From positions 1 through 61,055 of the forward strand of contig NW_026934374.1 of the NCBI RefSeq assembly GCF_032062105.1: a DNA stretch of 61,055 nt, read 5' to 3'. The DNA comes from Saccostrea cucullata. Its lineage: Eukaryota. The stretch's first letter is position 1. Each line of letters starts with the position of its first letter. Both the position numbers and the translations under genes were made by a program. The notes under the pieces were generated by a model. It saw only the letters and a list, made by a program, of their open reading frames with translations. It did not search any database and was not told the DNA's origin. Below are positions 693-61,055 of the stretch, piece after piece.

Positions 693-824
693 AATGTGTT
701 GACGGTTACTATGGCCTGAATTGCAGTACTCAGTGTGGAAATTGTCATCAAGGACTTTGTAACAAGAATAATGGATCCTGCCAAACTGGTTGCAACTTGA
801 ACTGGAGAGAACCTCTCTGCCAAG
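693..824 (+). CDS. Gene A EGF cassette exon (132 nt)
   Basis: AG..GT bounded; ECVDGYYGLNCSTQCGNCHQGLCNKNNGSCQTGCNLNWREPLCQ. Confidence 0.9.
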
Positions 825-6800: not shown

Positions 6801-9800
6801 GAACAATAAATAAATATCTTTGAATCGAAACACTATTCTGCCTGACTGAAACAATATAAATACTCACAACCAAGTAAAATTTGTAAACCACATTTTCGGA
6901 GCCAAAAGTTATTTTGATAAGGATAAGGCTTATAGCCGTAACTAAGGGGCTCTTATGTATAAAACCCTGAAAATCCCTTTGGGACCTATGGATTCACACA
7001 AATTGGTGATTAATAAAAATACGCAATTTTGTACGTATTTAGATCACATAAATTCCTTTATATACATAAATACACATAATACAAAATTAAAATTTTTATC
7101 CCAAAAATGTAGTACATCGGCAAATAATAGATACAAAATAAAATTATAGAATGTGGAGACGGTTTCTATGGCCTGAATTGCAGTACCCAGTGTGGAAATT
7201 GTAAAAATGGATTTTGTGACAAGAAAAACGGATCCTGCCAAACTGGTTGCAATTTAAACTGGAAAGAACCCCTCTGCCAAGGTAGATGTTTAATTTATCT
7301 TATAAATAGTGATGAGCATTATTAAATTATTATGATTTCTAACCAGTGAATACGAAATGTGTAACAAAAAGATAAATTAGATAAAGAAAAGAAAAATGTC
7401 AAGTTGTTAGAAGTGATGTATAGAATATTCAAAAAGAATAACTCTTCTAATTATAGAATGTGTTGACGGTTACTATGGCCAAAATTGTAGTACCAGATGT
7501 GGTAATTGTCGAGAGGGATATTGTGACAAGACGACCGAAAGTTGTTTGTCTGGTTGTAAACTGAATTGGAAAGAACCTCTTTGTCAAGGTTAATGTTGAA
7601 CGTCAATACGAGCTATGTGCATTATTCTCATATTTGCTTGCGAGTAAGATATTTCTAGCCAGCGAATAAGAAATGATTTTGTAACTATTAAATATTATGA
7701 TTTATAAGGAAGAAAATCTATTCTTTGTTAGAGGTGATGTACAGGCAATAAATGGAGAAAAATTTAATGTTGATAATAATTATTCCAATTATAGAATGTG
7801 TTGATGGTTTCTATGGCCAGAATTGTAGTACCCAGTGTGGAAATTGCCGAGAAGGAATCTGTGACAAGAAGACCGGAAGTTGTTTATCTGGCTGCCAATT
7901 AAACTGGAATGAACCTATGTGTCAAGGTAGATATTTAACGTCAAAAAGAGAGCAATATTTCTATGTTTTGCTTGTGAACTTGATGTTTCAAACTATTGGG
8001 TATTGCAATTGAAAAAAAATAATAAGGAAAAGGAATTTGTCTGAAAGAAATGATGGAAACCTATTCATGAGGACAAATTGAAGAATCATGCGTGAACAAT
8101 AAATAATAATAAAAACTATTTCAATTTTAGAATGTGTTGACGGTTACTATGACCAGAATTGTAACACCCAGTGTGGAAACTGTCGAGAGGGATTTTGTGA
8201 CAAGAGGACTGGAAGTTGTTTATCTGGTTGTAAACACAATTGGAAAGAACCTTTGTGTCAAGGTAAATATTTTACCTTAAAACGAACGAATAACATTATT
8301 CTCATATACTCAAGGTTTTTTGGCTTGTGAATAAGACGTTTCCAACTAATGGATGTAGCAAATTAATTAAGAAAAAAAATCTTTAATTTGAAAGGAATCA
8401 TGACTCCCAATCTATAATGCCCAAAAATCCCTTTCAATTACATAATGAGCTGACAGGTATTATGGCCAGAATTGTAGCAGGCAGTGTGATAATTGTCTAG
8501 AGGGACATTGTGACCCTAAAATCAGAAGTTGTATATTTTGATGTAAAATTAATCGGAAAGAACTTTGTGTCAAAGTAGATTTTTATCGCAAAATTAGTTT
8601 TGTGCATTATTCTCGTATTTACGAGTTTTCTTGCCTGTAACCACGATAGTTCTCTCATTAAGTTTTACAAATGAAAAGCAAACAAAGTCTTTTATGAGAA
8701 ATGATGTCTCCCAATTTTACAAGGAAATAATAAAAAATAATTATAAAAACTATTTCAATTATAGAATGTGTTGACGGTTACTTTGGCAAGAATTGTGGTG
8801 CTCGCTGTGGAAATTGTCTTGAAGGGTTTTGTGACAAGAAAAACGGAAGTTGTTTATCTGGCTGCAAATTAAATTGGAAAGAACCTTTGTGTCAAGGTAG
8901 ATGATAAAAATCATGATGTTCTATCCTTTTTTTAAATGTCTACACTTTGTTATCTTTATTTCTAATATATTGGGTGTTTTCAGCGTGGTGCTTACCTTGT
9001 CTTATTCAAGCGGTTTGGTAGTTATAAGTAGTGAAATTTTTAAACTACAAAAATTTCAATCGCTAAAGTTTCACCTTTCATTGTCCCTATGAAATACAAG
9101 AAAATTGACTTGATTTAATCAGTCTATTGTATAAGGAATTTAACCCTCATCTGGAATTGTAATCTGTAGTTATAAGGTATTATCTATTAATAAACTAAAC
9201 TTTCTTATCATAACAAGATGTCAAAAACTGGTATTACTATAGCATTAATAGAATAAGTAGACGGCTATAAATATTCAGAAACCGTTGCCTTGGTTCAATA
9301 ATAATGCATATATGCTGATAAGTTTCATCAAATTACCATTATAAAATTCTTTACATAGAATGTGTTGATGGAAATTATCACATGGACTGCAGCAGACAGT
9401 GTGGTCATTGTCTTACCGGAGTTTGTGATAAGACTAATGGAGCCTGTTTGAATGGATGTTCACCAAACTGGCAGGAACCTTTGTGTCGAGGTATGATTTA
9501 ACTATTAATTCAGATACATTTCATAAATGATGCTTCTTAAAATTAGAAGGAAAAGTTCTCCTTATATACTTTATATATACAGTAACGCATGACATCAACT
9601 GTTATGTTTAAAATGAAAACCTTAATGTTTATAAATATATTTGCTTGGGTTTTCGTTTTGGTCTTACTTTCAAATTAAAATTAGCTTAGCCTGAACGTGC
9701 TTTTCAATAGTCTTAACAAAGATACTTTAAGGAAAAAAAAACTTAAGAATACCTGAGAGATGTTTAAATTACGATGGAATCTCTGGCCAGAAGTGATACA

Positions 9801-11228
9801 AAGGAGATAGCATTATTTCAATTAATTTTAGGGTCGATATGATAACTTTGTTAAGAAAGACAAGCTATCAATGGGTATGTTTTTGACAGGGATAAATATA
9901 ACTTCTTTGAGCTGTTTTTATACCAAATTTGACTACGAAATACAGTGCGAGTATTCCTTGTACTAGTATCCATACTTATTTAAGACCCGGGACGAATGAG
10001 GTGATTCAAAGGAGAAAAAAACTTATCTTATGTACCTTATCAGGTAAATGCTACATTAATAACAGAGAAGTCATTTTAATTATCACAAGTGTTTTTTAAT
10101 GTTCTCAGTTTCATCTGCATTTCCCATTTAGAATGTGCTGATGGATCTTTTGGTGAAAGTTGCAATATACGGTGTGGAAATTGCATCCAAGGACTGTGTG
10201 ACAAGAGAAATGGAACCTGCATGATAGGCTGTTTTCCGGATTGGGAGGGACCTATGTGTCAGGGCAAGTTTTTAGTTTTATAAAAATTTCTTATTGGTAC
10301 TACATAACGATAAATTATTTTGGTTAGTTACTTTTAAATGTGAGATTTGCAGATAATAAAAACTTTAATTTTCATTGTTTCTATGTTTGCGTCAGACTTT
10401 CTTGTGTAATGTATTTTGTCATCTACATTTATTTCAGTTTTCAATTCATTATCATTGCCAAAAATATAATCAAAATAGATGTTAGGAAAGTCTTCAAAAA
10501 AAAACTTTCATGTTTTCTCATATCATCTTTTTTTTGTAAATTAACTGTGTGTGTTTATGAAATCAAATGATCACCAACCAGAGTAAGAAGATAGCAAAAA
10601 CAAACAAATAAAAACAAGACTCCGCACAAAAAAAATCTTTATTTTACTGAGTTTGAGATAAATTAGAAATATCTTATTTGTTTATGGGTAAAGAATGACA
10701 TCTAAGGACTTCACGAGTCACAGATTTCATTGAACGAATTCTATCTTGAAGTTGTATAATAAAAAATATAATTTTATTTTAGTTCTTACTACAAGAGAAC
10801 CACAAACGGGTGGTAAGTAGTTCGGGAATTCAAATTTTTACTTGTAAATTATACATGTTTTCTCAGACTTTTCATAAGGGATACAATTTACATTCTGGCC
10901 CGATTTGTTTTTTTTTTGTTCTTCAGATGAGGAGTTTTCCAAAACTTCCGTGGTCGTTATTTCTGTTATATCAACTCTTATTGGAGTATTACATTTGGGT
11001 GCGTTGATCATAGTCATATATATCAAGAGAACAAGATGCCTGTCACAGAATAACAGAGATCATAGCAACAATGACCAAATGTCGCGCAAGGATACAGAGC
11101 AGAAGTATGCTGAGTTAACAGGCGGAAAAGAAGATCACCATTATACGACCATTGATTCTACTTACAAGGAATCAGAATATCAGGAAATACATACTTATAA
11201 TAATACTGGATTTAACAAGGTCATGTGA
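693..11228 (+). CDS. Gene A: MEGF10/11- or SCARF-like multiple-EGF type-I membrane receptor (5'-partial, spliced)
   Basis: Exons 693-824, 1019-1150, 1798-1929, 7150-7281, 7457-7588, 7795-7926, 8131-8262, 8765-8896, 9359-9490, 10132-10263, 10783-10812, 10927-11228 join in frame (all phase 1); 10 repeats of 44 aa with 8 Cys, then TM and a Tyr-motif tail ending at TGA 11226-11228. Confidence 0.88.
1019..1150 (+). CDS. Gene A EGF cassette exon (132 nt)
   Basis: AG..GT; ECVDGYYGQNCSTRCGNCQEGYCDKTTGSCLSGCKLNWKEPLCQ. Confidence 0.9.
1304..1639 (-). mobile_element. tRNA-derived SINE, copy 1
   Basis: Reverse complement of the SINE at 35482-35830; A/B-box head, (ATCA)n tail; flanked by direct repeat TAGTGGGA (1296-1303 / 1640-1647). 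Confidence 0.9.
1676..1737 (+). pseudogene. Decayed 5' half of an EGF cassette exon
   Basis: tgtgctgacggtttctattgccagaaatgtagtgctaaatgtgaaatttgtcttggataa = CADGFYCQKCSAKCEICLG*; no AG acceptor; truncated. Confidence 0.7.
1798..1929 (+). CDS. Gene A EGF cassette exon (132 nt)
   Basis: AG..GT; ECVDGYYGQNCSTKCVNCQEGYCDKKTGSCLSGCKLNWKEPFCQ. Confidence 0.88.
1998..2169. mobile_element. Short degraded TA-type MITE
   Basis: Imperfect ends ctttatac.../...ttatacag with internal gggcgaaa-like subrepeats; interrupts intron sequence that aligns with ~550-590. Confidence 0.4.
5285..6128. repeat. Higher-order minisatellite (CCCAACCATA core, ~169-bp period)
   Basis: Marker TAGTATGG/CTG at 5421, 5590, 5758, 5928 (periods 169, 168, 170); each period has six CCAACCATA subunits. 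Confidence 0.9.
7150..7281 (+). CDS. Gene A EGF cassette exon (132 nt)
   Basis: AG..GT; ECGDGFYGLNCSTQCGNCKNGFCDKKNGSCQTGCNLNWKEPLCQ. Confidence 0.9.
7457..7588 (+). CDS. Gene A EGF cassette exon (132 nt)
   Basis: AG..GT; ECVDGYYGQNCSTRCGNCREGYCDKTTESCLSGCKLNWKEPLCQ. Confidence 0.9.
7795..7926 (+). CDS. Gene A EGF cassette exon (132 nt)
   Basis: AG..GT; ECVDGFYGQNCSTQCGNCREGICDKKTGSCLSGCQLNWNEPMCQ. Confidence 0.9.
8131..8262 (+). CDS. Gene A EGF cassette exon (132 nt)
   Basis: AG..GT; ECVDGYYDQNCNTQCGNCREGFCDKRTGSCLSGCKHNWKEPLCQ. Confidence 0.9.
8444..8574 (+). pseudogene. Full-length pseudo-exon (EGF cassette)
   Basis: 131 nt; acceptor AG>AT; first Cys TGT>TGA, second in-frame TGA, 1-nt deletion; GT donor retained. 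Confidence 0.85.
8765..8896 (+). CDS. Gene A EGF cassette exon (132 nt)
   Basis: AG..GT; ECVDGYFGKNCGARCGNCLEGFCDKKNGSCLSGCKLNWKEPLCQ. Confidence 0.9.
9359..9490 (+). CDS. Gene A EGF cassette exon (132 nt)
   Basis: AG..GT; ECVDGNYHMDCSRQCGHCLTGVCDKTNGACLNGCSPNWQEPLCR. Confidence 0.9.
10132..10263 (+). CDS. Gene A last EGF cassette exon (132 nt, GC donor)
   Basis: AG acceptor; ECADGSFGESCNIRCGNCIQGLCDKRNGTCMIGCFPDWEGPMCQ; donor G|GCAAGT. Confidence 0.82.
10783..10812 (+). CDS. Gene A 30-nt juxtamembrane microexon
   Basis: ttttattttag|TTCTTACT...GGTG|gtaagt; phase 1-1; VLTTREPQTG. Confidence 0.7.
10927..11228 (+). CDS. Gene A terminal exon: TM helix plus Tyr-motif cytoplasmic tail
   Basis: Strong polypyrimidine acceptor; VVVISVISTLIGVLHLGALIIVIYI then KR stop-transfer; YAEL, YTTI, YQEI, YNNTGF; AATAAA at ~11323. 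Confidence 0.88.
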
Positions 11229-14200: not shown

Positions 14201-14433
14201 AAAGAGGCTACTGATAATAGTTATCATTTTATTGCAGCTGTGTCCTAAATTGGGGTTTGCGCAAATCGAGAACATAATATTAGTGACAATGTCTTTGTAT
14301 TAAAATTATCTACGTTTTGAATCTTATTTTAAGATAATTAAAACTGCAATGTTTTTGTTATGAACGAACTGAAAAAAAACCCAGTCATTTAATTTGACCT
14401 TCGCTTATTTTTTATGTCTTGTTAATTTAACAG

Positions 14434-14634
14434 TGACGTCAGTTAAAATTGTTTTAAATAAAAATGTGAACATATTTCTGTTTATTTTGAAAATTTTTTA
14501 TGTTAAATATTTTAATAGACTTCTTCCATTTTGATATCTTATTTACATACCTTGACTATGCGTCTCTTATCTTTCGTTTTACCTGTTTATGTCATCAAAT
14601 CATATAATCCACTTCCCACTGTCAACCAGGAAGT
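14434..14634 (+). promoter_or_regulatory. Candidate proximal promoter motifs of gene B
   Basis: Perfect CRE TGACGTCA at 14434-14441; ETS-type ACTTCC (~14611) and CAGGAAGT (14627-14634) just upstream of ATG 14672. Motif match only. Confidence 0.3.
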
Positions 14635-14671
14635 CGAATGACGCCTTATATTTTATTCAAAATACAGGACA

Positions 14672-14735
14672 ATGTGGTTGGATGCAATCTTAGTGAATTT
14701 TCTTATACACACTGTACCAAAAATCTCAGGATTTG
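14672..14735 (+). CDS. Gene B first coding exon (signal peptide)
   Basis: MWLDAILVNFLIHTVPKISGF + G|gtaagt; phase 1, joins 24930 to give ...SGFVNLA. Confidence 0.72.
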
Positions 14736-47500: not shown

Positions 47501-50500
47501 CGGACCGTGGCCTGAGACGATGGGCCTTTCCTGGCTCTGAGAACTTCTGAAAAATCAGAATTTTTAATTTAGGTTGAAATTGTGGTATTTATCACTTAGA
47601 CTGTTTGTGACTATGTTTGTATTGTACATGGCCTGATTTCCCGTCTAGTCAATGCACAAATTGAGTCATTTTTTCCAAATCCTGTAAAACATTTAAAAAT
47701 GGCCTAACGTTGAAGCAATATTTCAATATTTTATAATATGCAATTAAATAATGAAATATTTTTTTCTGAAGATTGACAAGCATGTTTTAATTTTTGGATC
47801 GTAGTCTATGCACATATTTTGATTCTTTGCTGAATGTAGTCAAATACGTATGTTTTATGCAAAATTAAAGAACATTGCATTTTCTCAAAGCCTGTTTTCC
47901 TATGCTTAAATTCTCAAAAAAGATTTTTTTAATATAGGTAATGAAAGCACTGTCTACTTTATTTTGATATATGAAATGGGAAAGTGGGTGATAGTTTATT
48001 AATTGACGTAAGGACAGGATCATTTTTAAATGAACGTTAACCTAGCTCTTTTATTTTACTTGTCCTAAACCTCAACCTTAACGTAAAGTTTTATTTCTTT
48101 TTAAATATTAACATACATTTAATAATATTAATAAACAATTATTAATAAATAAATAATAATAATTAGTGATAAATGTACTGTATATTTAACTAAAATATCA
48201 TTCAGCAATTGTCACTCGATCTTTACTTATTATCTCCTATATTTGTAAGCTAACATATTCTTTTATAAGTTAAAATACGTTCAACAATGCGATTAATTGT
48301 GATAAACCAATAGCCTAATCACGAATTCAATACAGTTGTGCACGGAATAACAAATCAAGATAGCGCTTACTAACTGTTGTATATGGAACAACGTAAGGTG
48401 CTTTTGGAGTAAATTTTATAATTTTAGAATGTATTGACGGATTTTATAACCAGAATTGCAGTAATCAGTGTGGTAATTGCCAAAGTGAATTTTGTGATAA
48501 GAAAAATGGAAGCTGTATAAATGGTTGCAAAACGAACTGGAAGGAACCTCTATGTCAAGGTAAAAAATGTGTCCTACTCTCGGGTTAGAAATATTCCAAT
48601 AATGTTTTATATTTATAGCACAGTTATAGCAATAAGTACTTTGATAGATGAAATTCCATCGAATCAAAGGAATAAGAATGACTGGTGTTTAGCAAGGTCT
48701 TATTATGTGTGATTTGCCGTCCGCTTTATCAAGAGTTTATCCAAACATTTAGACAATTATTCGTTTTAAGAATTGCCAACTGATTTTACATTTTAAGTTA
48801 AGTATATATCAGTAAAACATCTGCATTGTTAGAAAAAGGTTTTAAAGTAATCCTTGAAACATTATGATCTTTTCTGTTTGAAGAAATGACTAACATTCAT
48901 AATTTCATATGGGACCTGATCCCATCTCTGATGTTTTTGTGATCCGTGTTTGCTCTGCTCCTATTTTGTATTATTTCATGGACTTTTGATCCTGAAAACT
49001 GTTTCTTATCTCCATATGTTTCATCTTCATATGTTCCATTTTTACAAATTCGCTCCAATGTTTAGAATGTAGTGACGGAATGTATGACCAGAACTGCAGT
49101 ACCAAATGTGGACATTGTCTAGAAGGATTTTGTGACAAGAGAAATGGAAACTGCCTTACTGGTTGTAAATTGAACTGGAAAGAGCCCCTCTGTAAAGGTT
49201 AATGTTTTAAGTTATAATAAGCGATGTGCATTATTGTGAATAAGTTAGATATATGTGTTATTATTCAGAAAAATATGCAAAGAGAAAAAAATGAAGTTGT
49301 TTATCTGGTTTTAAACTGAACTGGATTAAACCTTTACGTCAAGGTAGAAACGTGAATTATCACAGCAGACGTATTGTTTGTGTATTTATATTTTACGCTA
49401 GGTTTCCTATGTAGTAAATATTTGATCATATCAAAATAGATCTTCTACCATTTTGATTTGATTGTGAATGTTGCAATGGGTATATTTGCAATCTGGTTGA
49501 TTTTCTAGCTTAAATACTATTGTCTTTATATTTTGCCTCCGTAAAATGTAATGTAAATCCAGATCATTCTTATTTTTGGGGTAAATATATTTGAGATCTC
49601 GGACATCTTTATCTTAGACTGCAAGCGTCTCAGATGTAGCAAAAGTCATCATATATAGGGTTTCCAAAGTATGTTACATTTAATATTTATCTAATACTCG
49701 TTCTACACAAAGTCTTCAACAATATCATTTTGAAACAGTGCAATAATTGTATCCTATGGGTTGACTTTTAGTCTTTCATTTGCTTTTATCCAGGATTAAT
49801 GCTTAATTATCTCTATTATTGGCTAAAATTAATTGTTATTCATGAAATGTGTCTCTAGACCGTAAAACGAGAATAATTGGCGCACTACTGATTTTAGCGC
49901 CTTTGAAGTCCCTTGACCGTACTCTAATGAAAAAAAAATCAAAATTAGTGATAACTTTTTTCTTCTGAATAACATATGATAAGGTGTTCACTTTAAACAA
50001 AATATGCCAAGTAAAGGGCATCTCACCTATAAAACACGAAAACAGGGGAATTTACAACTAAATAATTTTTTACAGATCACTAAAAATTTTATTTTAAACC
50101 TACCAACCTGGAAATATTCACATACTCTAGTATTATATATAAGAAAATCGTTATACGGAATATGTAATAATATATTAAAGTCCATTCTACAAGAGCTAAA
50201 AACTGTCTTTTCCCAGTTTCTAAAATCTACATATAGAGCTACTTCTTAGATTTCTCTTACATCTATCTTAAATGAAATGCATATTTTCTGTTAGATATTA
50301 TTTTAACATCATAATATATTATATTTCATAATTTAGAGTGTGTTGACGGATTTTATGACGGGGAGTGCAATAAACATTGTGGACAATGTCTTCGAGGAGT
50401 TTGTGATAAGACAGCTGGGACTTGTATGAGTGGATGCTCACCAAACTGGCAGGAACCTTTGTGTCAAGGTAAGGTTTTATTTCTCTGTACATATGAAAGG

Positions 50501-52412
50501 ATAGTGATATGAAGTTGGCATAACAAATACTCTTGAGTTTCTGATTAACAATATCTGTGTGGTTTTTGGAGACCAGGTCTTCAAACTATCTATTTTAATC
50601 CCCAATGCCACCTATTGCCCCCCGTTTTGAGCAGACCTATTTTTGCAATATTATGAAGTAGAATTCGCGCAACATCTTATGCGTGAGAAGGAGCAACACT
50701 TGCTGTTGCCTTTAACTCGACTTATAGATATATCGAGGACGTATTGTCAATTGGCAATTGTAAGTTCCATTATTTTGTCGATACGATATTCATGTATCCT
50801 GGAGAGCTTGTGATAAAGGATACCACAGAGTCTGACACATCTCTTTCATATTTGGATAATTTACCTGAAAAAGACTGAAATGTAATCTAACAAATATGTT
50901 CTCTGATAAAAATGATTACCTTTACTTTTCTAACGTCATCTTCCCTTCGCAGTACAGTTAAGGTGCGCAATGGAAATATCGACTAAATTTTGTATTGAAA
51001 AATCTATTCGAATTCGTAATCGGGATTGCGATTATTTTTAGCACATTATTTATATCGGATAATTGTAATTATGATTAATAACTACATATTAAGGACGATT
51101 ATATTTTATATTAAGACTAGTCACGTAATGCTGCAGTCACGCGATTTTAGCACATTGGCTTGAAGTATTGATGTTACTTGGCATAACCAAGTTAAATTTC
51201 CAAGTTTAGCATATAAATATTTTCAAAACGCATTGTAGTTTCTAAAAAGTGCTGTGATCCTGTCTAAATTCTGCAATTTCATTGTTAAAATTATACATGT
51301 ATGCCCGAATGCTATATTTTTTGCTGGTCAGCGGCATGAAATATTATTTTAATTAAATTGTTTTAAAGATTTCATCAGAATCGCAGCACTTTTCAGATAC
51401 CTTAATAGTTCTATAGTTGAAATGTAAAAGCTTACTTTGATCCATAGAGTGTATGCCCTTGCACTAGATCGATTTATTAAGACCCCCCATATTACCCTCC
51501 GATGTACTTTCATACAAATATACGGCAGTGTCAATAGAATACGTAATGAACAGAAAATATATTAATAAGAATACATATTTTGTTGAGAAAATATTACTTG
51601 ATCAGTCTCTCACTGCATACAAACTACGTCACGTTGAAAGAAATGACGCCATATTGACAAGTGTATTGCGATCAGTGCATTGTTTATAACTTGTTATGTG
51701 GAATTTAACCTAAGACAAAACAACATGCTTTAGTAAGTTTTTATGTAGTTTGATGATTTCTTACTGGTTAAATTAGCAGATAAACTCATTTTGTGGTATT
51801 ATAGAGAAATGTTGTATGACGTATATTGTGTATGATGTCGTAGTCAAGTTTTCCCGTACAAATTAGGCTCCGCCTCCTTTTTGTAACCTTAACTGTGCTG
51901 CGTTACTTATACAGCATCTTCATTTCTCAATCGATTGCATGCAGATTGTATATATCTCAGTTGACTCGATACGCACGAACATGCTATACATATGAACACT
52001 TTCTTAAACGACATAGATTATTGACAAACAAGTTGATAAAACAAAAATATAAGCAGTCTCGATGAAAGGCATCATTTTGTAAGTTCTATAATCGATACAA
52101 TGACCTTGTCAGAAAAAAAAGAATTCATCATTATGGATTTTTCCGTCATTTCCTGATCATGACAAGGAGTACACAAGGCGGATGTGACTGTTCAGCAGGG
52201 GATGCTCACTCCTTCATAACACCTGATCCCACCTCTAATGTTTTTGAGGTCCGTGTTTGCTCTGCTCCTATCATGTATTTTTAGGTCACCTGAGTAAACT
52301 CGGGTGACCTATTGCCATCTGTTTTCGTCCGTCGTCGTTCGTCGTTCGTCGTGCGTCGTTCGTCGTGTGTTAACATTTGAACATTTTCAGCTTCTTCTCT
52401 GCAACCACTGAA

Positions 52413-52443
<31 letters not shown>

Positions 52444-52689
52444 TATGGGTAAGGGGGGAACAAAAATTGTGAATTTCATGATCCCTGCCCCCCTGGGGCC
52501 TGAGGGGTGGGGCCAAAACCACTAAAATTAATGCAATCTTTAAAAATCTTCTTCTTTACTCCTGGACATCAAGCATTCAAACTGTTTGCATGATTGTAAT
52601 CAGCATTGAGTCCTCTACCCAAATTGTGAAATTCATGGCCCTGGGACAGGGGTACTTGTGCTAGGGTGGGGCTAAATAAGTATATAGTG

Positions 52690-52723
<34 letters not shown>

Positions 52724-55700
52724 GCTCCTGAGTATTAAATAAACTTATTACGCAGTACAGTTAAGGCAACACATGAAAAAATATGGTAATGAGGTCATAA
52801 TGAGGTCTGACGTCATGACAGTTGCCCCATCCTGATTGATCCATATAAGGAAATGGTGCTCAAAATAACTATTTACTGATATTTGCAAGACTATGTAATA
52901 AACAGCAATATTTTCATGATTAAATTGAAAATAATTAGTGATTTTCTCATATATTAAATAGCATGTCTTTAAAATAATTCTCTTTTTACTGTGTCGTTTG
53001 TCTGCATTCGGCTTCAGCCAATCGCTTGCACTCGGTGATACGGAATGTTGTTTACATCTAAAAAGCGTGGCGACATCAGCTGAGATTTGCAGTGGATTTA
53101 AATGCAATAACCACACAATCTTTAAAGAAAATTTGGATAAGATAAGAGACAAGGCGTTGCTTCTCCCTTTTATGAGAATATGAGGACATTACTTCAGAAA
53201 ATGTCAGAAAACAGAGACGATTTGCACCAGCTCCGTAGATCCATCACTGTAATATTCCAGGCCAGGTATGTATGAGCATATGTAGGTACATGTATAGATC
53301 TACAATATGTATTCATGCTTTTATCAACATCAAAGAAAAACCCCGAGTGTGTGTGTGTCCATTTAGATGTATTATTTATAACAGTCAGTGAAAAATTGCA
53401 ATGCATTGCCTTGTGTGTACCCCCCCCCCTACTAAGTTGCACACTTTATGACTTTTTAGAATTATTAAAATTAAACTGCACTAAATATGTACTCAGTTCT
53501 TGTCAATCAACTCATTTTCTTTGAGACAATATGTGTAGTAATGGAGGTCATCAATAACACAAATTTAAACTAAATTAAATGAAATGTTTTCATTGTTTCA
53601 GTCAATGATCCACTAGTGACTAGGCCTAAACAAGCAATGATCATGTCTTTTGACATACTAACATGCTACACAATTCAAAAAAAATTTATCAGTGTCATTA
53701 TGTTGAAAACATAGAACCTCAACTGGTTGTAATTTTCTAGAATTTTTAAATTAATGAAAAAAAAATATTCATTTTTTTTTTGTTTAGATAACATGTACAT
53801 TAAAAATATTTGTATAATACTTTTATCATTGTAGCTGTCCAGAGTTTCAGGCTTAAAGAACATGGAGAATGAATAAATAAAAAATGTATCATTTCTCCAC
53901 AGGGTATGTATACTTCTAATTAAAATTTCACATATTTAGAGTATGCATGTGCTTTTTTTTCATCTTGGTAATGGTGAAACTAAGATTTTGTTTAGAAAAT
54001 ATTCTATCAATAACTGTAGTAAATGTCAGAGGTTTCACTTTCCCAGAGAAGTTTTGCAACACAATGTTTTTGCCATTTATATGAATAACAAATTCACTAC
54101 AGTATACAATGTAGCATAATTTGCATTGTCAAATGTAATGCCATTTAATTCGACAATGTATATTTAGTAATCTCATAGCATATAAATGCATACTTTATAT
54201 ATTGTGTTGTAGGCCTAGCTATTCCCAAATGTTGGACTAATGGATTCATTCAGGCAGCAAGTTAATCCATCATTTAAGGAAACTGGTATGCTCAATATTA
54301 GCTATAAACCATACAATATTCCTGGCAAGATTATTGAATTGTTTTGATAATAATTAAAAACTAACAGAAGAATTGAAAACATGTATATGCATTCTCTGTT
54401 AAATTTTTAATGCATTTTTTTATTTCACTTTTTTAAAAACAAACTACTTTCAATAATGGTATTTCCTGATTTTTCTCATATTTTCAGAATTCATTTTATC
54501 CACAAGAACATGAGGTGATGGAAATAATTTACACCTCCCCTTCATTCCTAGTCTGTCATTGGATTTGTAAAGAAATGTTTATTAAATAAATTTTCTAGAA
54601 ATAATAATTTGACTTTTTCATATATTTACTATACAGGTGTTGAAAGGCTATTAAGATTTGAAAATCTTACATATTGCATACATATTTTGTGTGGAGGGTA
54701 CTGATGTCCATCAAGATCTTATTTCCAACATGTACATTGTGTTCATTTATTTTTCAATAATATTACCAAAAACAGGAGACAAAAGACCCCCCTAATTGAT
54801 TCAAAATAGGATAGGGGACCACCTTTTGATTCTGAGGGAAGGGGGGGGTGGCAAGTTTTTCCAAGTCAGATTTTTTTCATTTTCATGTCAATGAAGGACA
54901 GATTAATATTTCCGATCAACAAGATGAAGGACAGATTAATTATTTATTTTTCTCATTGAAAAGTCTAACAAGATAAAAAAAAAAAATTAAAAACTCTGAT
55001 ACCTGAAAGGGCGAGATCACTGATCTTCAAGTATTTATTTCTAAAATCTGCCAACCCCTCCCCCTCATGATCTCGTATGCAGAAAGAAAAGAAAAATTAT
55101 TAACACAAGTGTGTGTACCATAGGCGTCGGAAGCAAAATGAAAGGGGAGCTATTTGAGAGGGGGAGGTAAAACCAACAGAGAAAGGTAAATTCCAGTGCC
55201 TACATTATGTAATCTATATAATTTGCAAATAAGTAGCTATAGGTAGGCTAAGCCCCCCCCCCCCCCCCCCCGGTTCCGACGCCTATGCGTACATTAGTGA
55301 GAGAGGGGTATATATACGTATTTAATTAATTTCTTATTAATGGAGGAAGCTATATTTTAATTAACCATTTGTTTTCTACACGAATATAGCAGCAATAATT
55401 AGACCTATGTGTGTGTAATACTATAATTCTTTGAGGAAATGCGGGAGGTTTGAAAGACGTCTTTTACCATACTGTAAATGTGTACAATGTATCGAGAACG
55501 AATACACAAAATAGAAAGAAATGTCAAAAATTTTATGCATACCGTTTTGATTTAGTTAAAAAAAGAGTCCAGCCCTGTCCGCATGTATATTTATTAAAAT
55601 TTACGAGGTAAACAAACTATAGCAAGTACTCAAGAGTTATCTCCCATGCTGGGTCAATGATGCGTTTGAAAACTATAATTAGATTGACTCTTTCAAGATT

Positions 55701-58700
55701 TCAATTCTTAATCAAAAAGTGCAAGGGCAAGGCGACAATTTAAAAAGTAGGTTTTTATTTTAAATTATTTATATTATTGTGTAGTTTTCAAAAAGTGATG
55801 CTCATTTCTTTGTAATCTTTTTGTTAATTTATAATTCACGATGAAATTAGGAAAATATCCAATTTTTCATACAATCTTGTCTGTTTAAGCTGAATAACTT
55901 AATTATATCGGAAAACTAACTGAATGAGCATCACTTTTGAGAAAGTATAGATACATAGGGACAACATAAAACATTTTGCAGTTAATTTTTTGCTTGCCTT
56001 GCCCTTGCACTTTTTGGTTAATTTTGACATGTCATTTTTTGACCTAAAATTGGAACCCACGTGACCTCAGGGGGTCACATGATGTCAAAAAATACCGATG
56101 TGAAAAGCGATGGACATACTCTTCAAGATAACAAATAGCTATTTTAACTAGAGTGTCTTCAAAAAAAAATAAAACTGTTATGCATAAAATGATTCGGATT
56201 CCTTGAGTTTTTATAGAAAATGTTGCCTTAACTGTACTGCGTAAGTACATAGTTATGATGAGCAAGAGTGCCTCTACTAAAATTGTGAATTTTATGGCCC
56301 CAGGGTCAGGGGTTCTTGTGTTAGGGCGGGGCTCTATTGATTATATAGAGAAAATACATGAATTCTTTGAAAATCTTCTTCTTTGCTTCTGGGTATTTAA
56401 TAAAGTACATAGTTATGATGGGCAAGTTATGATGGGGCGGCGCTCTATTGATTATACAGTGAAAATATATGAATTCTTTGAAAATCGTCTTCTCTGCTCC
56501 TAGATTTTATATAAACTAACTAAGTACATAGTTATGATGAGCAAGAGTGCTTCTACCAAAATTGTGAATATCATGGCCCCAGGGTCAGAGGTTCTGGTGT
56601 TAGGGGGGGGGCTATATTGATTATACATGTATAGTGAAAAATAACATGAATTCTTTGAAAATCTTCTTCTTTGCTCCTGGGTATTAAATAAACTAACTAA
56701 GTACATAGTTATGATTAGCAAGAGTGCCTCTACCAAAATTATGAATTTTATGGCCCCAAGGTCAGGGGTTCTTGTGTTAAGGGCGGGGCTCTATTGATTA
56801 TATAGAGAAAATACATGAATTCTTTGAAAATCTTCTTTGCTCCTGGGAATTAAATAAACTAACCAAGTACATAGTTATGATGAGCAAGAGTGCCTCTACC
56901 AAAATTATGAATTTTTTGGCCCCAGGGTCAGGGGTTCTGGTGTTAGGGCGGGGCTCTATTGATTATATAGTGAAAAAACATGAATTCTTTGATAATCTTC
57001 TTCTCTGCTCCTAGATTTTATATAAACTAACTAAGTACATAGTTATGATGAGCAAGAGTGCCTCTACCAAAATTGTGAATATTATGGCCCCAGGGTCAGG
57101 GGTTCTTGTGTTGATTATACATGTACAGTGAAAAAAACATCAAATCTTTGAATATTTTCTTCTTTGTACTTAGGTTTTAAGTAGATGAACTACCTACATA
57201 GTTATGAGCAAGGGCCCTAATCTTCAAGAATTGTAAATTTCAAGGCCCCACGGTCACTTGTACATAGGGGGGGGGGGGGGCTGTACTTATATATTGAAAA
57301 TGAATGAATTGTTTGAAATGTGCTCCTTTGTATTAATCAAATATTTTTGAAAAGCATGAATGCCTTTCCAAAAATTGTACAATGTGTGGATCTAGGCCTA
57401 AGAGTCCAGGGTTCATGTGTGGTAGTGGTACTACTCATTATTGCTGAATATTACTGATTTGTTGAAATGCATTTTTTGTTCCCCTACCCTGCCTATGGGT
57501 ATTAAGTAACCAAACTAAGGACCTGCTATAGCATCTGGCTTAAAACATGGATCAAATTCAATCACTTGAAAGTTGTTGAATAATGCTCAGGTGACCTATA
57601 AGGCCCATGGGCCTCTTGTCTTTATGGACTTTTGGTCTTGAATGAACATATGAAGATAAAGAAAATCATTCAAGCTTGCTTGTTAGATTACCATATGATT
57701 GTCTTTTTCAATTAAAATATCAAAGCATGAAACAGTTGTGTCAGACTCTTGAATATAATGTTCCTTATGTCCACATTTTTCATTCAATAGATTGCATGAA
57801 TGATGATTAATAACTGAACATTTTTATTAATTGGGGTAAAACATTGCTTACAATATTTAGCTTAAGTGAACCCTTTGATACTTTGATGCATTATGGAATT
57901 TTTTTTTTACCCTTAAGAAAAATGCTAAAATTTAGCGTAGTAAATTTTAGTGTTTTCTCATTAGGTATCAAATGCTTTTTAAAAAATATTTATGCACATT
58001 AGCAATAGAAAATACTGAGTTAAGTCATTTTTATAACATTTGAAGAGTGTACTAACGGATCTTATGGCAAAAACTGCAGCACACAGTGTGAAAATTGTCT
58101 TGGAGATTTTTGTGACAAGGAAAATGGAACCTGTTTGACTGGTTGCAAAACAAACTGGCATGGACCCTTATGTCAAGGTAAAATATTGAAAAGCATGTCT
58201 TTATGCATTATTCGAAGATATAAAAGATATTGTTTCTACCCTTGAATGAAATTTGATTATTCTTCTTCACTGATAATCATATTCGACTAGATTAAAAAAA
58301 TAACTCTGCAGGATTATTACTTATTGAGCGAAAATTGACATTTCATCGCCAACTGTAGTCTGTATTGTTTCCCTTAAAATAATAAGAGAAAGTATTATTC
58401 CATATATAAAATGATTGAAGCTGACCAAAATGCAAACTTAATAAAAAACTCAAAAAACATTAACAAGTGCAAAAATAGGTTCAGTTTCAGCTCAGTTAAG
58501 GAAAAAAATAAGGGAAAATAATCGGAAATATAATTTAATCAAAACATTGAAATGACATCATTTTATTTTAAAAAATACAAAGTAGCTCGACAGGGAAACT
58601 TCATCTGTACTTATAATAGTCATTTCCAGAGTTCGCGATCTTGAGCTCGCACTCGTACATGGATATATAAGGATCTCTAGGGATGCGTGTCTAGACATAA

Positions 58701-61055
58701 TTTTCGTGTTGCATAAATATTCATATTAACATTCACAATTTCTTAATATATTAGATTCTAATATAGTGATTTATTTGCCATGTATGCATAACCTGTACTT
58801 ACAATAATAAAAGAGAACACCAAAATTAAATTTAAAAATAAATAAGGTTATATCATTTTTATTTTAACATTTCTTTAAATACCTGTTATTTAATTTAGAC
58901 AACGAACTCTCAACTTGTTTCCTTTTCATCATCCAAATACAACAACCAGTCCGTTATAAGCAGTCTCGCCTGAGAGAAGGGGGTGTAAGCAAAACATATT
59001 CAGTGGCGGGGGTGTACTAAAAATCCCTGACAATCAGGGTTTATTATTAAGTTTATTATTAAGGTGACACAAAGATATAGTTGCCATGTTTTTTGTAGTT
59101 TTCTGTATTTCGATATTGGTGGAGATGACATCTCTATGTACAATTCTCACATCCTCTCCCTTCCAGACACGGAATATCGTTATAAAAGTTGAAAAGGGGT
59201 GGTGGTAATTCAAGTCATGACTTAAGCATTTTGACAAGTAAACAAATATATTTTTGTAAGTGGATTATATGGTTTTCTTATTCATATTACTGATATAAAC
59301 ATAGAAATCTAAGGTTTTTGTGCATTAGAAAAACTTCAGATTGTTGCAAGTGACCTTCAGAAAAAAATTCACCATTTTAATAATAAAGGTGGAGTTTGCA
59401 TTGTAGCTAGGGCAGAGATAAACAGACGTCTGCAAAGACCATGGAAAAAATTTAACAGAAAAATGAATAAAGAGTTAATGTTGAACACGTTCTTTGTGCA
59501 TTTAATCTGAACCGCGCTGTAGGTACCCTGTGGAGACATCCAAGATATGCGTAAACTACGAGTCAAATTTTTCGGTGCCGTGTCATATGGAAGAAAAATC
59601 TCTATAATGCATAATTTAAACCTTATGTACTTTAATAGATTTCAAAGTATCTTACTCTCTTATTTAATGAGGGTAGGACATTTAAAATTTTTACACTATA
59701 GATGTACTAGAATTAGGCAAATAATACGTCTCAGACTTTTTAACCTTTCAAACAATCCCTCTTTGTTGTCAGCTGGCAGAGTACGAGCCGTGTTCGAACT
59801 TGCTTTACAAGAAATGTCTAATAAGACAATCTCAACTCGTCTGTGTCTATGAGCTGTCTCTCACAGTATCCTCTTTCCAATAAATATTTATGCATGTATT
59901 TTTTTTAATTGATTATTTCGCACTCATTTATATTATCATCAGCTTATTTTACCTCACATTACTTGTGTAACGTATTAACAATTAAAAGAAATAACAGCGT
60001 ACAGTCATGTTCATGTTTATTCCATGAATAAAAAATAGCTAAGATATACAAATTAAATTATATGGTATTTGAAATCAAGGGAAAACCTAATAATAGAATA
60101 TAAGGCATAATTCTCCAATAAATTCTCTAAAAATAGAAACAAATAAAAAACATCAACCAAGCTTTTCGTTATTTTAAGCTAGAGGTTGTTTCTTGTTTGG
60201 CATCTGCTTTCTTTTTAATATGTTGACTAGAATGGAATGGTTTGTTTTATTCTCTCGTTATAGTATCAGCTTCAAAACAAGAGGAGGAGGAAAATGATAC
60301 AGCCATTATTGGAGGGACTGTCCCGGCAGTCTTAATTGCAGTTTTCGTTGGAGTTATCATATTAATAATATACAGGTCAATATTACAGTTCCATTTGCAA
60401 ATAATACTCTATTTTCTAATTTCTCCAATCAATACCAGATTTAGAGAAGAGAAGTGCTGTCTTCAATATTTCTCTGTTACATTGTTGAAATTATGAAGTC
60501 CAAGTTTAATTATAGGGCAATATTCAGATCTTATTCAGAATATTATTTTAATCTGTGATATATATGTCTTGAGCGTATTTTTTTTAATTGCTCAATTTAT
60601 ATTCATCGTCCAAATATTCAGTAATGTTACACATCCATGTAAATTGGTAGAATCTGATTCGTCAAGAAATATTTGTTAAATAAACACTTTTACCCGCTGA
60701 GTAATGAAGCCACGGCTTCCATCGTAGGAACAGTTAACATTGTTTGACGAATGATATTCCAAAAATATTGACTGTTCAGAATTTATGCTTGAAAGGTTCA
60801 TTGTAAAATACATAAGTATAAAACAAACAATGAAATATATTCAGTATATGATAAATATTAAGTGTAGTTGAGTGTTGCATTGAAAATGTCCACCCCAAGA
60901 AAACCATTGTCAACCAAGGCTGCTGACAATTGTTTTCTTGGAGTGAAAATATTCAGTGTTTCACTAACTACATGCAATGTTCATATAATTTTCCGGTTTT
61001 ATAGACGGCATAGAAACAACGGTGGTAAAGAGGGCCTCATGGAAAACGATAGATA
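14672..61055 (+). CDS. Gene B: F-type-lectin-like domain plus multiple-EGF type-I membrane receptor (3'-partial, spliced)
   Basis: Exons 14672-14735, 24930-25166, 34338-34595, 34790-34927, 38644-38781, 40857-40988, 41169-41300, 41477-41608, 41756-41887, 44508-44639, 47005-47136, 48428-48559, 49066-49197, 50337-50468, 58046-58177, 60264-60375, 61005-end join without stops. Confidence 0.85.
15081..15091 (+). promoter_or_regulatory. YY1-type motif at the LINE 5' end (internal promoter)
   Basis: CCAAAATGGCG a few bases inside the 5' end, analogous to the YY1 site in the mammalian L1 5'UTR. Confidence 0.5.
15314..16195 (+). CDS. LINE ORF1 (coiled coil plus L1-type RRM-like nucleic-acid-binding protein)
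   Basis: 293 aa; long heptad region followed by EQYSRKYNVKFHGLPE and HRIP...PIIVKF motifs. Confidence 0.92.
   Translation: MSTSQAGVLTRNMSTGGEKSNKSSSKQSPVLKTPTKGGEGEWTQIQIQLKEIKSDLNKTLKADDVKELIKNVVQEMLQKHQDKIEKKFNDKIEGLKQENRQLKDSIEKLEADKRAIKRELDESNEALNDLHNRFEENENMAKAAFAKANQNEQYSRKYNVKFHGLPETEGENPLEIVNNTLADVGVEIQGSDVVAIHRIPGKPDEHKPIIVKFLNIDSKIRVMRKRSNIKDLKKGWKVTDDVRKANVDLIIELTKDPRIKSAWYFNGSVYGQYGTKRVKFDIFDNIERKLKNK
16521..20441 (+). CDS. LINE ORF2 (APE endonuclease, reverse transcriptase, CCHC); one premature stop at codon 47
   Basis: True start ATG 16521 (MSFSVLSFNCRG...LQDTH); TAA 16659-16661; then open 16662-20441 with GDFN, RLDYFL, SDHS, PGSDG, WRPISLLN, DFEKAFD, RQGDPVSP, QYADD, CxxC..HLFFEC. 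Confidence 0.95.
21013..21480. mobile_element. MITE with 5-bp TSD
   Basis: CAGGCGCAGATTCAG...CTGGATCCGCCACTA imperfect TIRs with subterminal G/C runs; CACTG on both flanks (21008-21012 / 21481-21485). Confidence 0.65.
23351..23493. repeat. Long near-perfect palindrome (hairpin element)
   Basis: ~65-bp arms (gttgcattatgcatgtactatgcctaaata.. / ..tatttaggcatagtacatgcataatgcaac) around loop gagccggaggcga. Confidence 0.85.
23993..24064 (+). other. tRNA-like relic (pseudo-tRNA or orphan SINE head)
   Basis: A box TGGCGTAATCG and B box GAGTTCGATCC at tRNA spacing; acceptor and anticodon stems pair poorly. Confidence 0.5.
24930..25166 (+). CDS. Gene B exon 2: N-half of F-type-lectin-like domain
   Basis: 237 nt, phase 1-1; NLAHTP...ASRAVDGD...TCAIA...VWWKVWLNRTFNIAYLEVFLRSD fits the NLA / AVDG / WWxVxL / RxD pattern. 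Confidence 0.85.
25340..25850 (+). mobile_element. Degenerate Penelope-like RT fragment with 3' tail
   Basis: ...NIPSSPANDVYMS*FIRYARECS... similar to 1-240 and 51905-52280. Confidence 0.55.
27185..28900 (-). mobile_element. 5'-truncated, decayed L1/Tx1-group LINE
   Basis: Minus-strand pieces LFNFLWDKSERIKRNTL, KLPHFYKQILSSF and zinc knuckle CTLCKTTETTKHLLFEC; T-rich end at ~27185-27200. Confidence 0.8.
28920..30055 (+). mobile_element. HINE/pearl-like non-autonomous Helentron with ~145-bp tandem repeats
   Basis: TTTTATGCCCC start, (GTCT/GTTT)n microsatellite, then ~7 units with TGACCTTTGACC cores; marker TTGGCCATAA-like at ~29183, 29326, 29470, 29602, 29749, 29895, 30041. Confidence 0.75.
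30060..30455. mobile_element. Right-end fragment of the CGC..TTAAGG TIR family
   Basis: 30194-30455 aligns with ~51640-51902 and ends CCTTAATAGTGCTGCG. Confidence 0.7.
31427..33818. mobile_element. Mariner-like non-autonomous element hosting a HINE
   Basis: TA|CGAGGGTCATT ... AATGACCCTTCG|TA ends; only a short TIR match remains. Confidence 0.45.
32431..33793 (+). mobile_element. HINE-like element with ~165-bp tandem repeats
   Basis: Same head (ctgttttcgtccgtcgtcg), repeat units and GACCTATAAGG tail as 52281-57619. Confidence 0.8.
34338..34595 (+). CDS. Gene B exon 3: C-half of F-type-lectin-like domain
   Basis: 258 nt, phase 1-1; TTNRATGFSIY...CP...FFNERP...SVEICEVRVMG (LCEVxVxG-type end motif). 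Confidence 0.87.
34790..34927 (+). CDS. Gene B EGF exon (138 nt)
   Basis: GCDQIRYHFGCTKKCSAECKNRHCDAFNGSCIYGCSDPGAVSLDCI. Confidence 0.87.
35482..35830 (+). mobile_element. tRNA-derived SINE, copy 2 (full length)
   Basis: A box TAGCTCAGTCGG, B box GAGTTCGTATC, (ATCA)n tail, TSD TCATATGTTGAGCA (35468-35481 / 35831-35844). Central GGCACGATAAAGATCCC resembles the Meta-SINE domain (recall, unverified). Confidence 0.92.
38644..38781 (+). CDS. Gene B EGF exon (138 nt)
   Basis: MCEDGTYASNDLCEQCGHCKGDTACDKGTGRCPSGCKENWTGDHCK. Confidence 0.88.
39641..39792. other. Assembly gap
   Basis: 152 N. Confidence 1.
40130..40335. mobile_element. Tc1/mariner-type MITE
   Basis: TA|CTGTAAAAGCACAAATATTCGTGGG ... 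CCCACGAAAATTTGTGCTTCTACAG|TA; internal ACGAAATT subrepeats. Confidence 0.85.
40857..40988 (+). CDS. Gene B EGF cassette exon (132 nt)
   Basis: ECVDGYYGEDCSTQCGNCQSGHCDKTIGHCPSGCKLNWEEPLCQ. Confidence 0.9.
41169..41300 (+). CDS. Gene B EGF cassette exon (132 nt)
   Basis: ECVDGYYDQNCSTQCGNCREGLCDKKNGSCLSGCKLNWKEPLCQ. Confidence 0.9.
41477..41608 (+). CDS. Gene B EGF cassette exon (132 nt)
   Basis: DCVDGYYDKNCSTRCGNCQSGHCDKTTGNCPSGCKLNWREPFCQ. Confidence 0.88.
41756..41887 (+). CDS. Gene B EGF cassette exon (132 nt)
   Basis: ECVDGNYGRDCSSMCGNCREGFCDKKNGSCLSGCKGNWEEPLCQ. Confidence 0.9.
44508..44639 (+). CDS. Gene B EGF cassette exon (132 nt)
   Basis: ECADGYYDQNCRTHCGNCLKGFCDKINGSCQSGCKGNWNEPLCQ. 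Confidence 0.9.
44727..45709. mobile_element. CGC..TTAAGG TIR element (TSD CA)
   Basis: CA|CGCAGGTATGTTAAGG ... CCTTAATCAACCCGCG|CA; imperfect TIR. Confidence 0.55.
45929..46265 (+). mobile_element. tRNA-derived SINE, copy 3
   Basis: Colinear with 35482-35830. Confidence 0.9.
47005..47136 (+). CDS. Gene B EGF cassette exon (132 nt)
   Basis: ECVDGFYDEECGTMCGHCLTGVCDKTNGTCTSGCSLNWQDPLCQ. Confidence 0.9.
48428..48559 (+). CDS. Gene B EGF cassette exon (132 nt)
   Basis: ECIDGFYNQNCSNQCGNCQSEFCDKKNGSCINGCKTNWKEPLCQ. Confidence 0.9.
49066..49197 (+). CDS. Gene B EGF cassette exon (132 nt)
   Basis: ECSDGMYDQNCSTKCGHCLEGFCDKRNGNCLTGCKLNWKEPLCK. Confidence 0.9.
49285..49343 (+). pseudogene. Decayed 3' half of an EGF cassette exon (gene B)
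   Basis: gaagttgtttatctggttttaaactgaactggattaaacctttacgtcaag|gtagaa; two Cys codons lost; 5' half deleted. Confidence 0.75.
50337..50468 (+). CDS. Gene B EGF cassette exon (132 nt)
   Basis: ECVDGFYDGECNKHCGQCLRGVCDKTAGTCMSGCSPNWQEPLCQ. Confidence 0.9.
50948..51902. mobile_element. CGC..TTAAGG TIR element (TSD TT)
   Basis: TT|CGCAGTACAGTTAAGG ... CCTTAACTGTGCTGCG|TT; removing it restores ttc cct tac tta (FPYL) in the host RT relic. Confidence 0.8.
55119..55287. mobile_element. MITE (CATAGGCGTCGGAA TIR)
   Basis: 14-bp perfect TIR; flanks TGTAC / CGTAC (probable 5-bp TSD with 1 mismatch). Confidence 0.8.
55708..56021. mobile_element. TTAA-bounded inverted-repeat element
   Basis: TTAATCAAAAAGTGCAAGGGCAAGGC / GCCTTGCCCTTGCACTTTTTGGTTAA plus inner AAAAGTGATGCTCATT / AATGAGCATCACTTTT. 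Confidence 0.7.
58046..58177 (+). CDS. Gene B last EGF cassette exon (132 nt)
   Basis: ECTNGSYGKNCSTQCENCLGDFCDKENGTCLTGCKTNWHGPLCQ. Confidence 0.88.
60264..60375 (+). CDS. Gene B transmembrane exon
   Basis: VSASKQEEEENDTAIIGGTVPAVLIAVFVGVIILIIYR; phase 1 in, phase 2 out (AG|gtcaat). Confidence 0.83.
61005..61055 (+). CDS. Gene B first cytoplasmic exon (cut by window end)
   Basis: ttttatag| phase 2; RRHRNNGGKEGLMENDR completes the basic stop-transfer. Confidence 0.65.

What the first reader, a model, noticed from the sequence alone, without database searches (positions are those of the whole stretch)
693..61055. Candidate paired-receptor locus: two tandem receptors with shared EGF stalk cassettes but different signalling tails
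Seen: genes A and B use the same 132-nt cassette (8131-8262 vs 41169-41300 differ at about 12 of 132 nt by my count), yet their TM and cytoplasmic parts are unalike in sequence and exon structure. A has one terminal exon with a short multi-YxxL/I tail; B has a separate TM exon with a phase-2 intron and a tail that continues beyond the window. Established: vertebrate paired receptors (KIR, LILR, Siglec, SIRP) share ectodomains through gene conversion while carrying opposing tails, and CED-1/Draper/MEGF10 signal through Tyr motifs. Inference: A is an activating/phagocytic member and B a counterpart, possibly ending in tyrosine-phosphatase domains as I recall for molluscan EGF-repeat receptors. 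B's tail is not visible, so this is unproven.
Basis: partly seen in the sequence, partly recalled or inferred. Interest (0 to 1): 0.82.

Follow-up and report, generated by a model that had tools for sequence, protein, structure and literature searches.

The report
Oyster ITAM-versus-phosphatase receptor pairs
Oysters keep neighbouring receptor genes whose outer, sugar-binding-like parts are repeatedly swapped between them but whose inner parts are either a short kinase-recruiting tyrosine tail or a full tyrosine phosphatase, an arrangement that resembles the paired on/off immune receptors of vertebrates but is not yet tested in cells.

Summary
The window (inferred: Saccostrea cucullata) holds two tandem type I receptors of one family: F-type-lectin-fold domain, EGF-like cassettes, TM. 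A ends in one exon with three YxxL/I motifs spaced eight residues apart. B runs off the contig; its closest paralogs share its TM and first tail exon and continue into tandem tyrosine-phosphatase domains with intact D1 motifs. The two tails are unrelated and each is shared across oyster genera, yet a tree of 43 ectodomains follows genus, not tail: 14 tail changes against 14.4 for shuffled labels, A-type monophyly rejected (AU p=0.0004). Some sister A/B ectodomains (71-88% identical) are genomic neighbours. The lectin-EGF-phosphatase architecture is known (Biomphalaria SudRes1; this scan noted one elsewhere in this genome, s1-701215). I found no paper on the pairing with ITAM-tailed siblings. 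Expression, ligand and sign of signalling are untested; B could prime Src rather than oppose A. The N gap is intronic, frame-neutral and was not filled.

The parts
693..10263 (+). Gene A stalk: ten open 132-nt phase 1-1 EGF-like cassette exons starting at 693, 1019, 1798, 7150, 7457, 7795, 8131, 8765, 9359, 10132 (the last has a GC donor). A's lectin and first EGF exons lie before the contig start.
   Evidence: paralog C13234 A places them upstream
8444..8573 (+). Dead cassette in A (no AG acceptor, frameshift and stop); a decayed copy sits at a like position in two other A-type genes
10783..10812 (+). 30-nt phase 1-1 linker mini-exon of A; the same peptide precedes the TM in the S. echinata RefSeq protein
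10927..11228 (+). Terminal exon of A: TM plus about 67-residue tail with three acid-preceded Yxx[L/I] motifs at 8-residue spacing (two overlapping ITAM-consensus pairs; the third also fits the loose ITIM pattern)
   Evidence: dN/dS 0.23 among four paralogs
14672..14735 (+). Gene B exon 1: start codon and signal-peptide-like segment
   Evidence: matches the N-terminus of P0001
14784..22789 (.). Nested insertions in B intron 1: non-autonomous DNA element with long terminal inverted repeats, interrupted by an L1/Tx1-type LINE (about 15075-20582). Not part of the receptor.
24930..25166 (+). Gene B lectin-fold domain, first exon
34338..34595 (+). Gene B lectin-fold domain, second exon
34790..38781 (+). 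Two 138-nt EGF-like exons of B (34790-34927, 38644-38781)
39641..39792 (.). Assembly gap, inside an intron between two phase 1-1 exons; left unfilled
40857..58177 (+). Gene B stalk: ten 132-nt cassettes starting at 40857, 41169, 41477, 41756, 44508, 47005, 48428, 49066, 50337, 58046
60264..60375 (+). Gene B TM exon, phase 1 in, phase 2 out
61005..61055 (+). Start of B's first cytoplasmic exon, cut by the contig end; 81% identical (13 of 16 residues) to the same exon of PTP-bearing paralogs

Best explanation
A and B are two signalling versions of one oyster surface-receptor family kept in tandem clusters. Shown: both versions have an F-type-lectin-fold tip on a stalk of variable numbers of EGF-like cassettes; the A version ends in a triple YxxL/I tail, the B version in tandem PTP domains (for the window's B, inferred from its closest paralogs); both tail types are older than the split of Saccostrea, Ostrea and Crassostrea/Magallana; and ectodomains have been re-assorted between the tail types many times within lineages, by gene conversion and/or unequal crossing-over. 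Inferred: the pair works like paired immune receptors. Ligand clustering of A lets a Src-family kinase phosphorylate the ITAM-like tail and recruit Syk/Shark (phagocytosis or cytokine response), while B, engaging the same or a similar ligand, brings its own phosphatase to the contact and damps the response with no need for an ITIM and SHP-1/2. Exchange keeps activating copies matched to ligands, for example microbes that exploit the phosphatase receptor.
For: Tail identity: (KNRF, WPD, HCSAGVGRTG, Q-loop present in D1; D2 lacks the catalytic Cys). Triple Tyr spacing conserved from 30-90% identity paralogs to C. virginica and C. gigas; reciprocal profiles find 7/7 and 14/14 tails, 0/21 shuffles; purifying selection on the tail. 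Ectodomain tree ignores tail type: 14 changes vs 14.4 shuffled, at least 11 forced by starred branches, AU p=0.0004; with long and partial rows removed and a mixture model 10 vs 10.2, AU p=3.6e-8, while genus needs only 5 changes vs 14.9. 22 of 43 ectodomains have a nearest neighbour with the other tail. The three lowest synonymous distances in lectin exon 2 are all cross-tail pairs (0.26-0.32). One cassette of C13234 B nests with A cassettes (99/93) while its intron flanks are B-like. Linkage. Oyster hemITAM-Syk signalling is reported for C-type lectins (PMC13027682); related snail RPTPs map to a parasite-resistance locus (PMC12297450).
Against: No expression, ligand or signalling data (one search listed no RNA run). 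Ectodomain identity of pairs is 71-88%, lower than the near-identity of recent vertebrate pairs such as Siglec-5/14, so shared ligands are not assured. Lectin exons show average dN/dS 0.25-0.35, no overall positive selection. The nearest non-mollusc phosphatases are RPTP-alpha/epsilon, which are known Src activators (own knowledge). Public gene models in tandem arrays can be mis-joined; only S. cucullata loci and two other loci were checked against DNA.
Confidence: 0.55

Rival explanations
1. Cooperative, CD45-like pair: B's phosphatase removes the inhibitory C-terminal phosphate of a Src-family kinase and so primes signalling through A's ITAM; shared ectodomains bring both to the same ligand.
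For: Best non-mollusc matches of the B-type phosphatase region are RPTP-alpha/epsilon; these and CD45 activate Src kinases (own knowledge). Same genomic pattern is expected.
Against: A-type genes outnumber B-type about 30 to 11 in this genome (lower bounds), as in families with several activating and few inhibitory members; a priming phosphatase would not obviously need a lineage-matched ectodomain. Neither point is decisive.
Confidence: 0.2
2. Mechanical by-product: the genes sit in tandem arrays, so unequal crossing-over and conversion shuffle ectodomains between two old tail types with no functional pairing; A and B act in different cells or processes.
For: Cassettes are freely duplicated, shuffled and lost (block duplication 597-1197 vs 7053-7635, dead cassettes); dN/dS below 1 in the ectodomain; arrays such as A-A (C18885) exist.
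Against: Both tails are kept under purifying selection in every ectodomain subclade and genus sampled, often as one A plus one B sister pair with full support; random shuffling with loss would be expected to leave some subclades with one tail only. Sampling here was not designed to test this.
Confidence: 0.2
3. Artefact of assembly or annotation: mis-joined gene models and haplotigs create apparent ectodomain swaps.
For: Fragmented 23,869-contig assembly; a gap inside B; one O. edulis phosphatase gene is split in two models.
Against: Hand-read gap-free contigs show separate A and B genes each with its own exon set; sister ectodomains are 71-88% identical, not identical; the pattern recurs in five species assembled independently.
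Confidence: 0.05

Closest known systems
Biomphalaria sudanica SudRes1 MEGF/GBD receptor PTPs (PMC12297450)
   Same: Galactose-binding-like domain, multiple EGF domains, one TM, tandem PTP domains; clustered paralogs with variable EGF number; sits among other MEGF genes; linked to parasite resistance.
   Different: The passages read describe no ITAM-tailed siblings and no ectodomain exchange between tail types; orthology to the oyster genes was not tested.
Vertebrate paired receptors (Siglec-5/14, Siglec-11/16, PILR; definition in PMC13358205)
   Same: Closely linked genes, similar ectodomains, different cytoplasmic parts, ectodomain exchange between types.
   Different: Not Ig or C-type lectin folds; the activating-type member carries its own ITAM-like tail rather than using DAP12/FcR-gamma (no conserved charged TM residue); the counterpart has catalytic PTP domains instead of ITIMs; opposite function is not shown.
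Hydractinia Alr family (PMC9546547) and Botryllus FcoR family (PMC12582321)
   Same: Invertebrate clustered receptor families mixing ITAM/hemITAM and inhibitory tails; overlapping ITAMs in Alr tails; intergenic recombination in FcoR.
   Different: Those are IgSF proteins with ITIM tails; here a lectin-fold/EGF ectodomain and an intrinsic phosphatase. No allorecognition role is known for oysters' genes.
CED-1/Draper/MEGF10/PEAR1
   Same: EGF-like stalk and Tyr-motif tail; RefSeq gives these names to many family members.
   Different: N-terminal domain is an F-type-lectin fold, not EMI; no NPxY in A's tail; the names are automatic.
F-type lectins (eel AAA 1k12, striped bass FBP32 3cqo, lectinolysin 3lek)
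   Same: Fold and sequence profile match.
   Different: The His of the fucose-binding motif is missing and the Arg spacing differs; ligand unknown.

Membership tests
MEGF/GBD receptor-type PTP (gene B) | N-terminal galactose-binding-like domain | tested here: met
   Atlas 0.96 to PF22633/PF00754 cluster; model of paralog P0078 domain pLDDT 86, Foldseek E about 1e-8 to F-type lectins
MEGF/GBD receptor-type PTP (gene B) | Multiple EGF-like repeats and a single TM | tested here: met
   12 Cys-rich exons and one TM exon; Pfam EGF_laminin only weak on single exons, clear on relatives
MEGF/GBD receptor-type PTP (gene B) | Tandem PTP domains in the window's own gene | tested here: inconclusive
   Beyond the contig end; no separate orphan continuation was found. 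Met in the closest paralogs, which share TM and first tail exon
Active classical PTP (D1 of B-type paralogs) | KNRY-type loop, WPD loop, HCSAGxGR, Q loop | tested here: met
   KNRF, WPDHG, HCSAGVGRTG, Q-loop in P0163, P0109, P0098, P0157; activity itself not testable
ITAM-bearing receptor (gene A) | Yxx[I/L]x6-9Yxx[L/I] in the tail (consensus from PMC9546547) | tested here: met
   Two overlapping matches; shuffle p 5e-6 for the triple; spacing conserved in relatives
ITAM-bearing receptor (gene A) | Phosphorylation and Syk/Shark recruitment | not testable with these tools
   needs biochemistry
Paired receptors | Closely linked genes | tested here: met
   Window, C13234, C6005, C10004, C22523; C. 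virginica neighbours LOC111114377/8
Paired receptors | Similar ectodomains maintained by exchange, different tails | tested here: met
   conversion versus unequal crossing-over not resolved
Paired receptors | Inhibitory member signals through ITIMs and SHP-1/2 | tested here: not met
   B-type has catalytic PTP domains; no ITIM pattern in the juxtamembrane part of the closest paralog P0163
Paired receptors | Co-expression in the same cells, shared ligand, opposite outputs | not testable with these tools
   no RNA run was listed
CED-1/Draper/MEGF10 | N-terminal EMI domain | tested here: not met
   N-terminus is an F-type-lectin fold; no EMI hit in Pfam scans of eight family proteins
CED-1/Draper/MEGF10 | NPxY motif in the tail (own knowledge) | tested here: not met
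   absent from the A tail
F-type lectin (fucose-binding) | H-x26-R-x-D-x4-R/K motif (own knowledge) | tested here: not met
   His absent, two Arg kept with different spacing

The most novel reading that the evidence does not exclude
Oysters evolved a paired immune-receptor system in which the inhibitory partner is itself a receptor tyrosine phosphatase: an ITAM-versus-enzyme pair with ectodomains kept matched by recurrent exchange throughout oyster evolution, possibly extending to the snail MEGF/GBD phosphatases tied to schistosome resistance.
Probability: 0.45. Interest if true: 0.85.

Novelty: new variant of a known kind. Interest (0 to 1): 0.72.

Why it matters
If true, molluscs balance activating and inhibitory surface signals with a design not described in the papers I could search: the brake is a ligand-matched receptor phosphatase, not an ITIM adaptor site. 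It would give a function to dozens of oyster genes now auto-named MEGF10, draper or RPTP-alpha/kappa, offer candidate loci for disease resistance breeding, and make a direct prediction for the snail SudRes1 locus (its non-phosphatase MEGF neighbours should carry Tyr-motif tails and swapped ectodomains). The tails are short and testable in standard reporter chimeras.

Tried and rejected
The 12/132 pair as proof of conversion: rejected, the B cassette is consensus-like. B's tail homologous to A's: rejected. A as a Draper/MEGF10 member: rejected on architecture. Finding B's own continuation elsewhere in the assembly: DNA search was swamped by an intronic repeat and exon searches found only paralogs. 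RNA evidence: none was listed. Word search with the A tail exon was blank, and Pfam left the lectin and tail exons unnamed, which is why the one large protein search was used. Single-exon AU tests for the two EGF exons were not significant (p 0.26, 0.23). Spliced models of the window's genes were searched exon by exon by reference; the joined step was left out. The N stretch was neither filled nor looked up. Five paper searches for this pairing in oysters or molluscs found no description; the library is incomplete.

Full report
What the window is. The window is a whole contig (G000:C16511) of a 1.17-Gb, 23,869-contig genome. Four paralogous contigs have lengths 45,691, 75,074, 313,977 and 24,191, the same as the contigs of Saccostrea cucullata RefSeq proteins returned later, so the genome is inferred to be that rock oyster.

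Observation. The two cassettes differ at 12 of 132 nt. Gene A has ten open phase 1-1 cassettes, a dead one at 8444, a 30-nt linker exon and one terminal TM-plus-tail exon; gene B has a signal exon at 14672, two lectin-like exons, two 138-nt EGF-like exons, ten cassettes, a TM exon ending in phase 2 and the first 51 nt of a tail exon. The A tail has three acid-preceded YxxL/I motifs eight residues apart, which 200,000 shuffles reproduce at 5e-6.

The gap. N 39641-39792 is intronic, between two phase 1-1 exons, so it cannot shift the frame. C13234, which has no gap, shows the same A, intergenic, B order; its intergenic DNA is 78-89% identical to window 11303-14765 and its B gene is collinear with the window's B right of the gap. 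Continuity is therefore likely, not proven. The letters were not filled or looked up.

What B is. B's TM exon finds three close paralogs (66-73%), each followed by the same first tail exon. On C10004 and C6927 the tail continues into exons that Pfam calls Y_phosphatase, twice over. D1 keeps KNRF, WPD, HCSAGVGRTG and the Q loop; D2 has lost the catalytic Cys. RefSeq names these RPTP alpha-like and T-like. The window's own PTP exons lie beyond the contig and were not found elsewhere, so this step is an inference from paralogy.

What A is. A-type genes on C13234 and C18885 have the same lectin and EGF exons as B upstream of the A tail, and S. echinata XP_061180611.1 is a complete A-type protein, linker peptide included. 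The N-terminal domain folds like F-type lectins (pLDDT 86; Foldseek E about 1e-8 to lectinolysin, SP2159, eel AAA and FBP32) but lacks the His of the fucose motif. The tail is under purifying selection (dN/dS 0.23) and is one family across oysters: a Crassostrea profile finds 7 of 7 Saccostrea/Ostrea tails and the reverse finds 14 of 14, against 0 of 21 shuffles and 0-1 of 20 phosphatase juxtamembrane segments.

Ectodomains do not follow tails. Cassette identity between A and B genes (mean 0.715) equals that among A genes (0.724) or among B genes (0.726). In lectin exon 2, an A gene is 71-79% identical to B genes of its subfamily but 38-43% to A genes of the second subfamily, and the three smallest synonymous distances are all A-to-B. 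Across 43 ectodomains from S. cucullata, S. echinata, O. edulis, C. virginica and Magallana, the tail label needs 14 changes, no fewer than shuffled labels (14.4), and A-type monophyly is rejected (AU p=0.0004). Leaving out 11 long, partial or truncated rows and using a mixture model gives 10 against 10.2 and p=3.6e-8, while genus needs 5 changes against 14.9. The phosphatase domains of these genes form one group apart from three outgroups (98/99, long-branch warning). Sister pairs include C. virginica P0099/P0168 (85%), P0103/P0143 (71%) and O. edulis P0106/P0051 (85%); P0103 lies about 4 kb downstream of its phosphatase sister. By coordinates this genome has at least 57 lectin exons, 30 A-like tails and 11 phosphatase-type tails, with both types on the same contig at least five times. 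Tree counts cannot tell conversion from unequal crossing-over, nor the direction of exchange.

How it most likely works. Shown: two old, unrelated tails on a shared, repeatedly exchanged ectodomain, in tandem. Inferred: A recruits Syk/Shark after Src phosphorylation, as oyster hemITAM lectins are reported to do (PMC13027682), and B brings a ligand-matched phosphatase that damps the signal (0.55). The main rivals are that B primes Src as RPTP-alpha/epsilon or CD45 do (0.2; nearest non-mollusc matches are RPTP-alpha/epsilon), that exchange is a by-product of tandem arrangement (0.2), or mis-joined models (0.05). No RNA run was listed, so expression is unknown.

Relation to what is known. The lectin-EGF-PTP architecture is described in Biomphalaria sudanica at a schistosome-resistance locus (PMC12297450). 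Paired receptors are defined by linkage, similar ectodomains kept by conversion and opposite tails, the inhibitory one with ITIMs (PMC13358205); Hydractinia Alr and Botryllus FcoR are invertebrate families with ITAM/ITIM mixes (PMC9546547; PMC12582321). The oyster family meets the genomic criteria, fails the ITIM criterion by having an enzyme instead, and is untested on function. It is not a Draper/MEGF10 member despite automatic names. I found no paper on this pairing, within an incomplete library. Earlier scan notes mention the triple tail in this window and a lectin-EGF-PTP receptor on another contig; neither was used as evidence.

Verdict. Real feature; new variant of a known kind; interest 0.72.

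Noticed in passing
window 15075-20582: L1/Tx1-type LINE with two open ORFs (15314-16195; 16665-20441 with endonuclease, RT, zf-RVT), poly(A) and an 11-nt target-site duplication, inserted in the left inverted repeat of a non-autonomous DNA element (14784-22789) in B intron 1; looks recent.
   Followed up: partly
L007 (G000:C11818:335881-336132, minus strand): A-like TM exon whose tail carries about seven repeats of an (E/N)QYTxI-type motif, in a contig with five PTP catalytic exons.
   Followed up: no
G000:C11141:4504-9154, minus strand: An A-like TM+tail exon lies only about 4.3 kb upstream of a PTP catalytic exon with no lectin exon between; could be one gene with alternative ITAM or phosphatase endings, or an orphan tail. 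One search did not resolve it.
   Followed up: partly
window 8444-8573, 452-496, 49268-49343: Decayed cassette copies; the 8444 one has decayed counterparts in two other A-type genes, so its loss predates their split.
   Followed up: partly
window 10263-10269: Last A cassette uses a GC donor site.
   Followed up: no
window 597-1197 vs 7053-7635: Block duplication of two cassettes with their intron (80% identity) inside gene A.
   Followed up: partly
window 5308-6128, 29056-30056, 56242-57330, 60612-60990: 86-bp tandem array; 147-bp and 177-bp satellite-like arrays; a multi-copy element with inverted ends in B's post-TM intron (at least 40 genomic copies).
   Followed up: no
P0108 (Potamilus streckersoni): An EGF-stalk relative from a freshwater mussel ends in a tyrosine kinase domain, a third tail type on a similar stalk.
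   Followed up: no
window 28917-30050 and 33873-34340: B's intron 2 resembles C10004 B, whereas its 5' end resembles C13234 B and C18885 A2: the gene looks mosaic along its length; part of the match is satellite DNA.
   Followed up: partly
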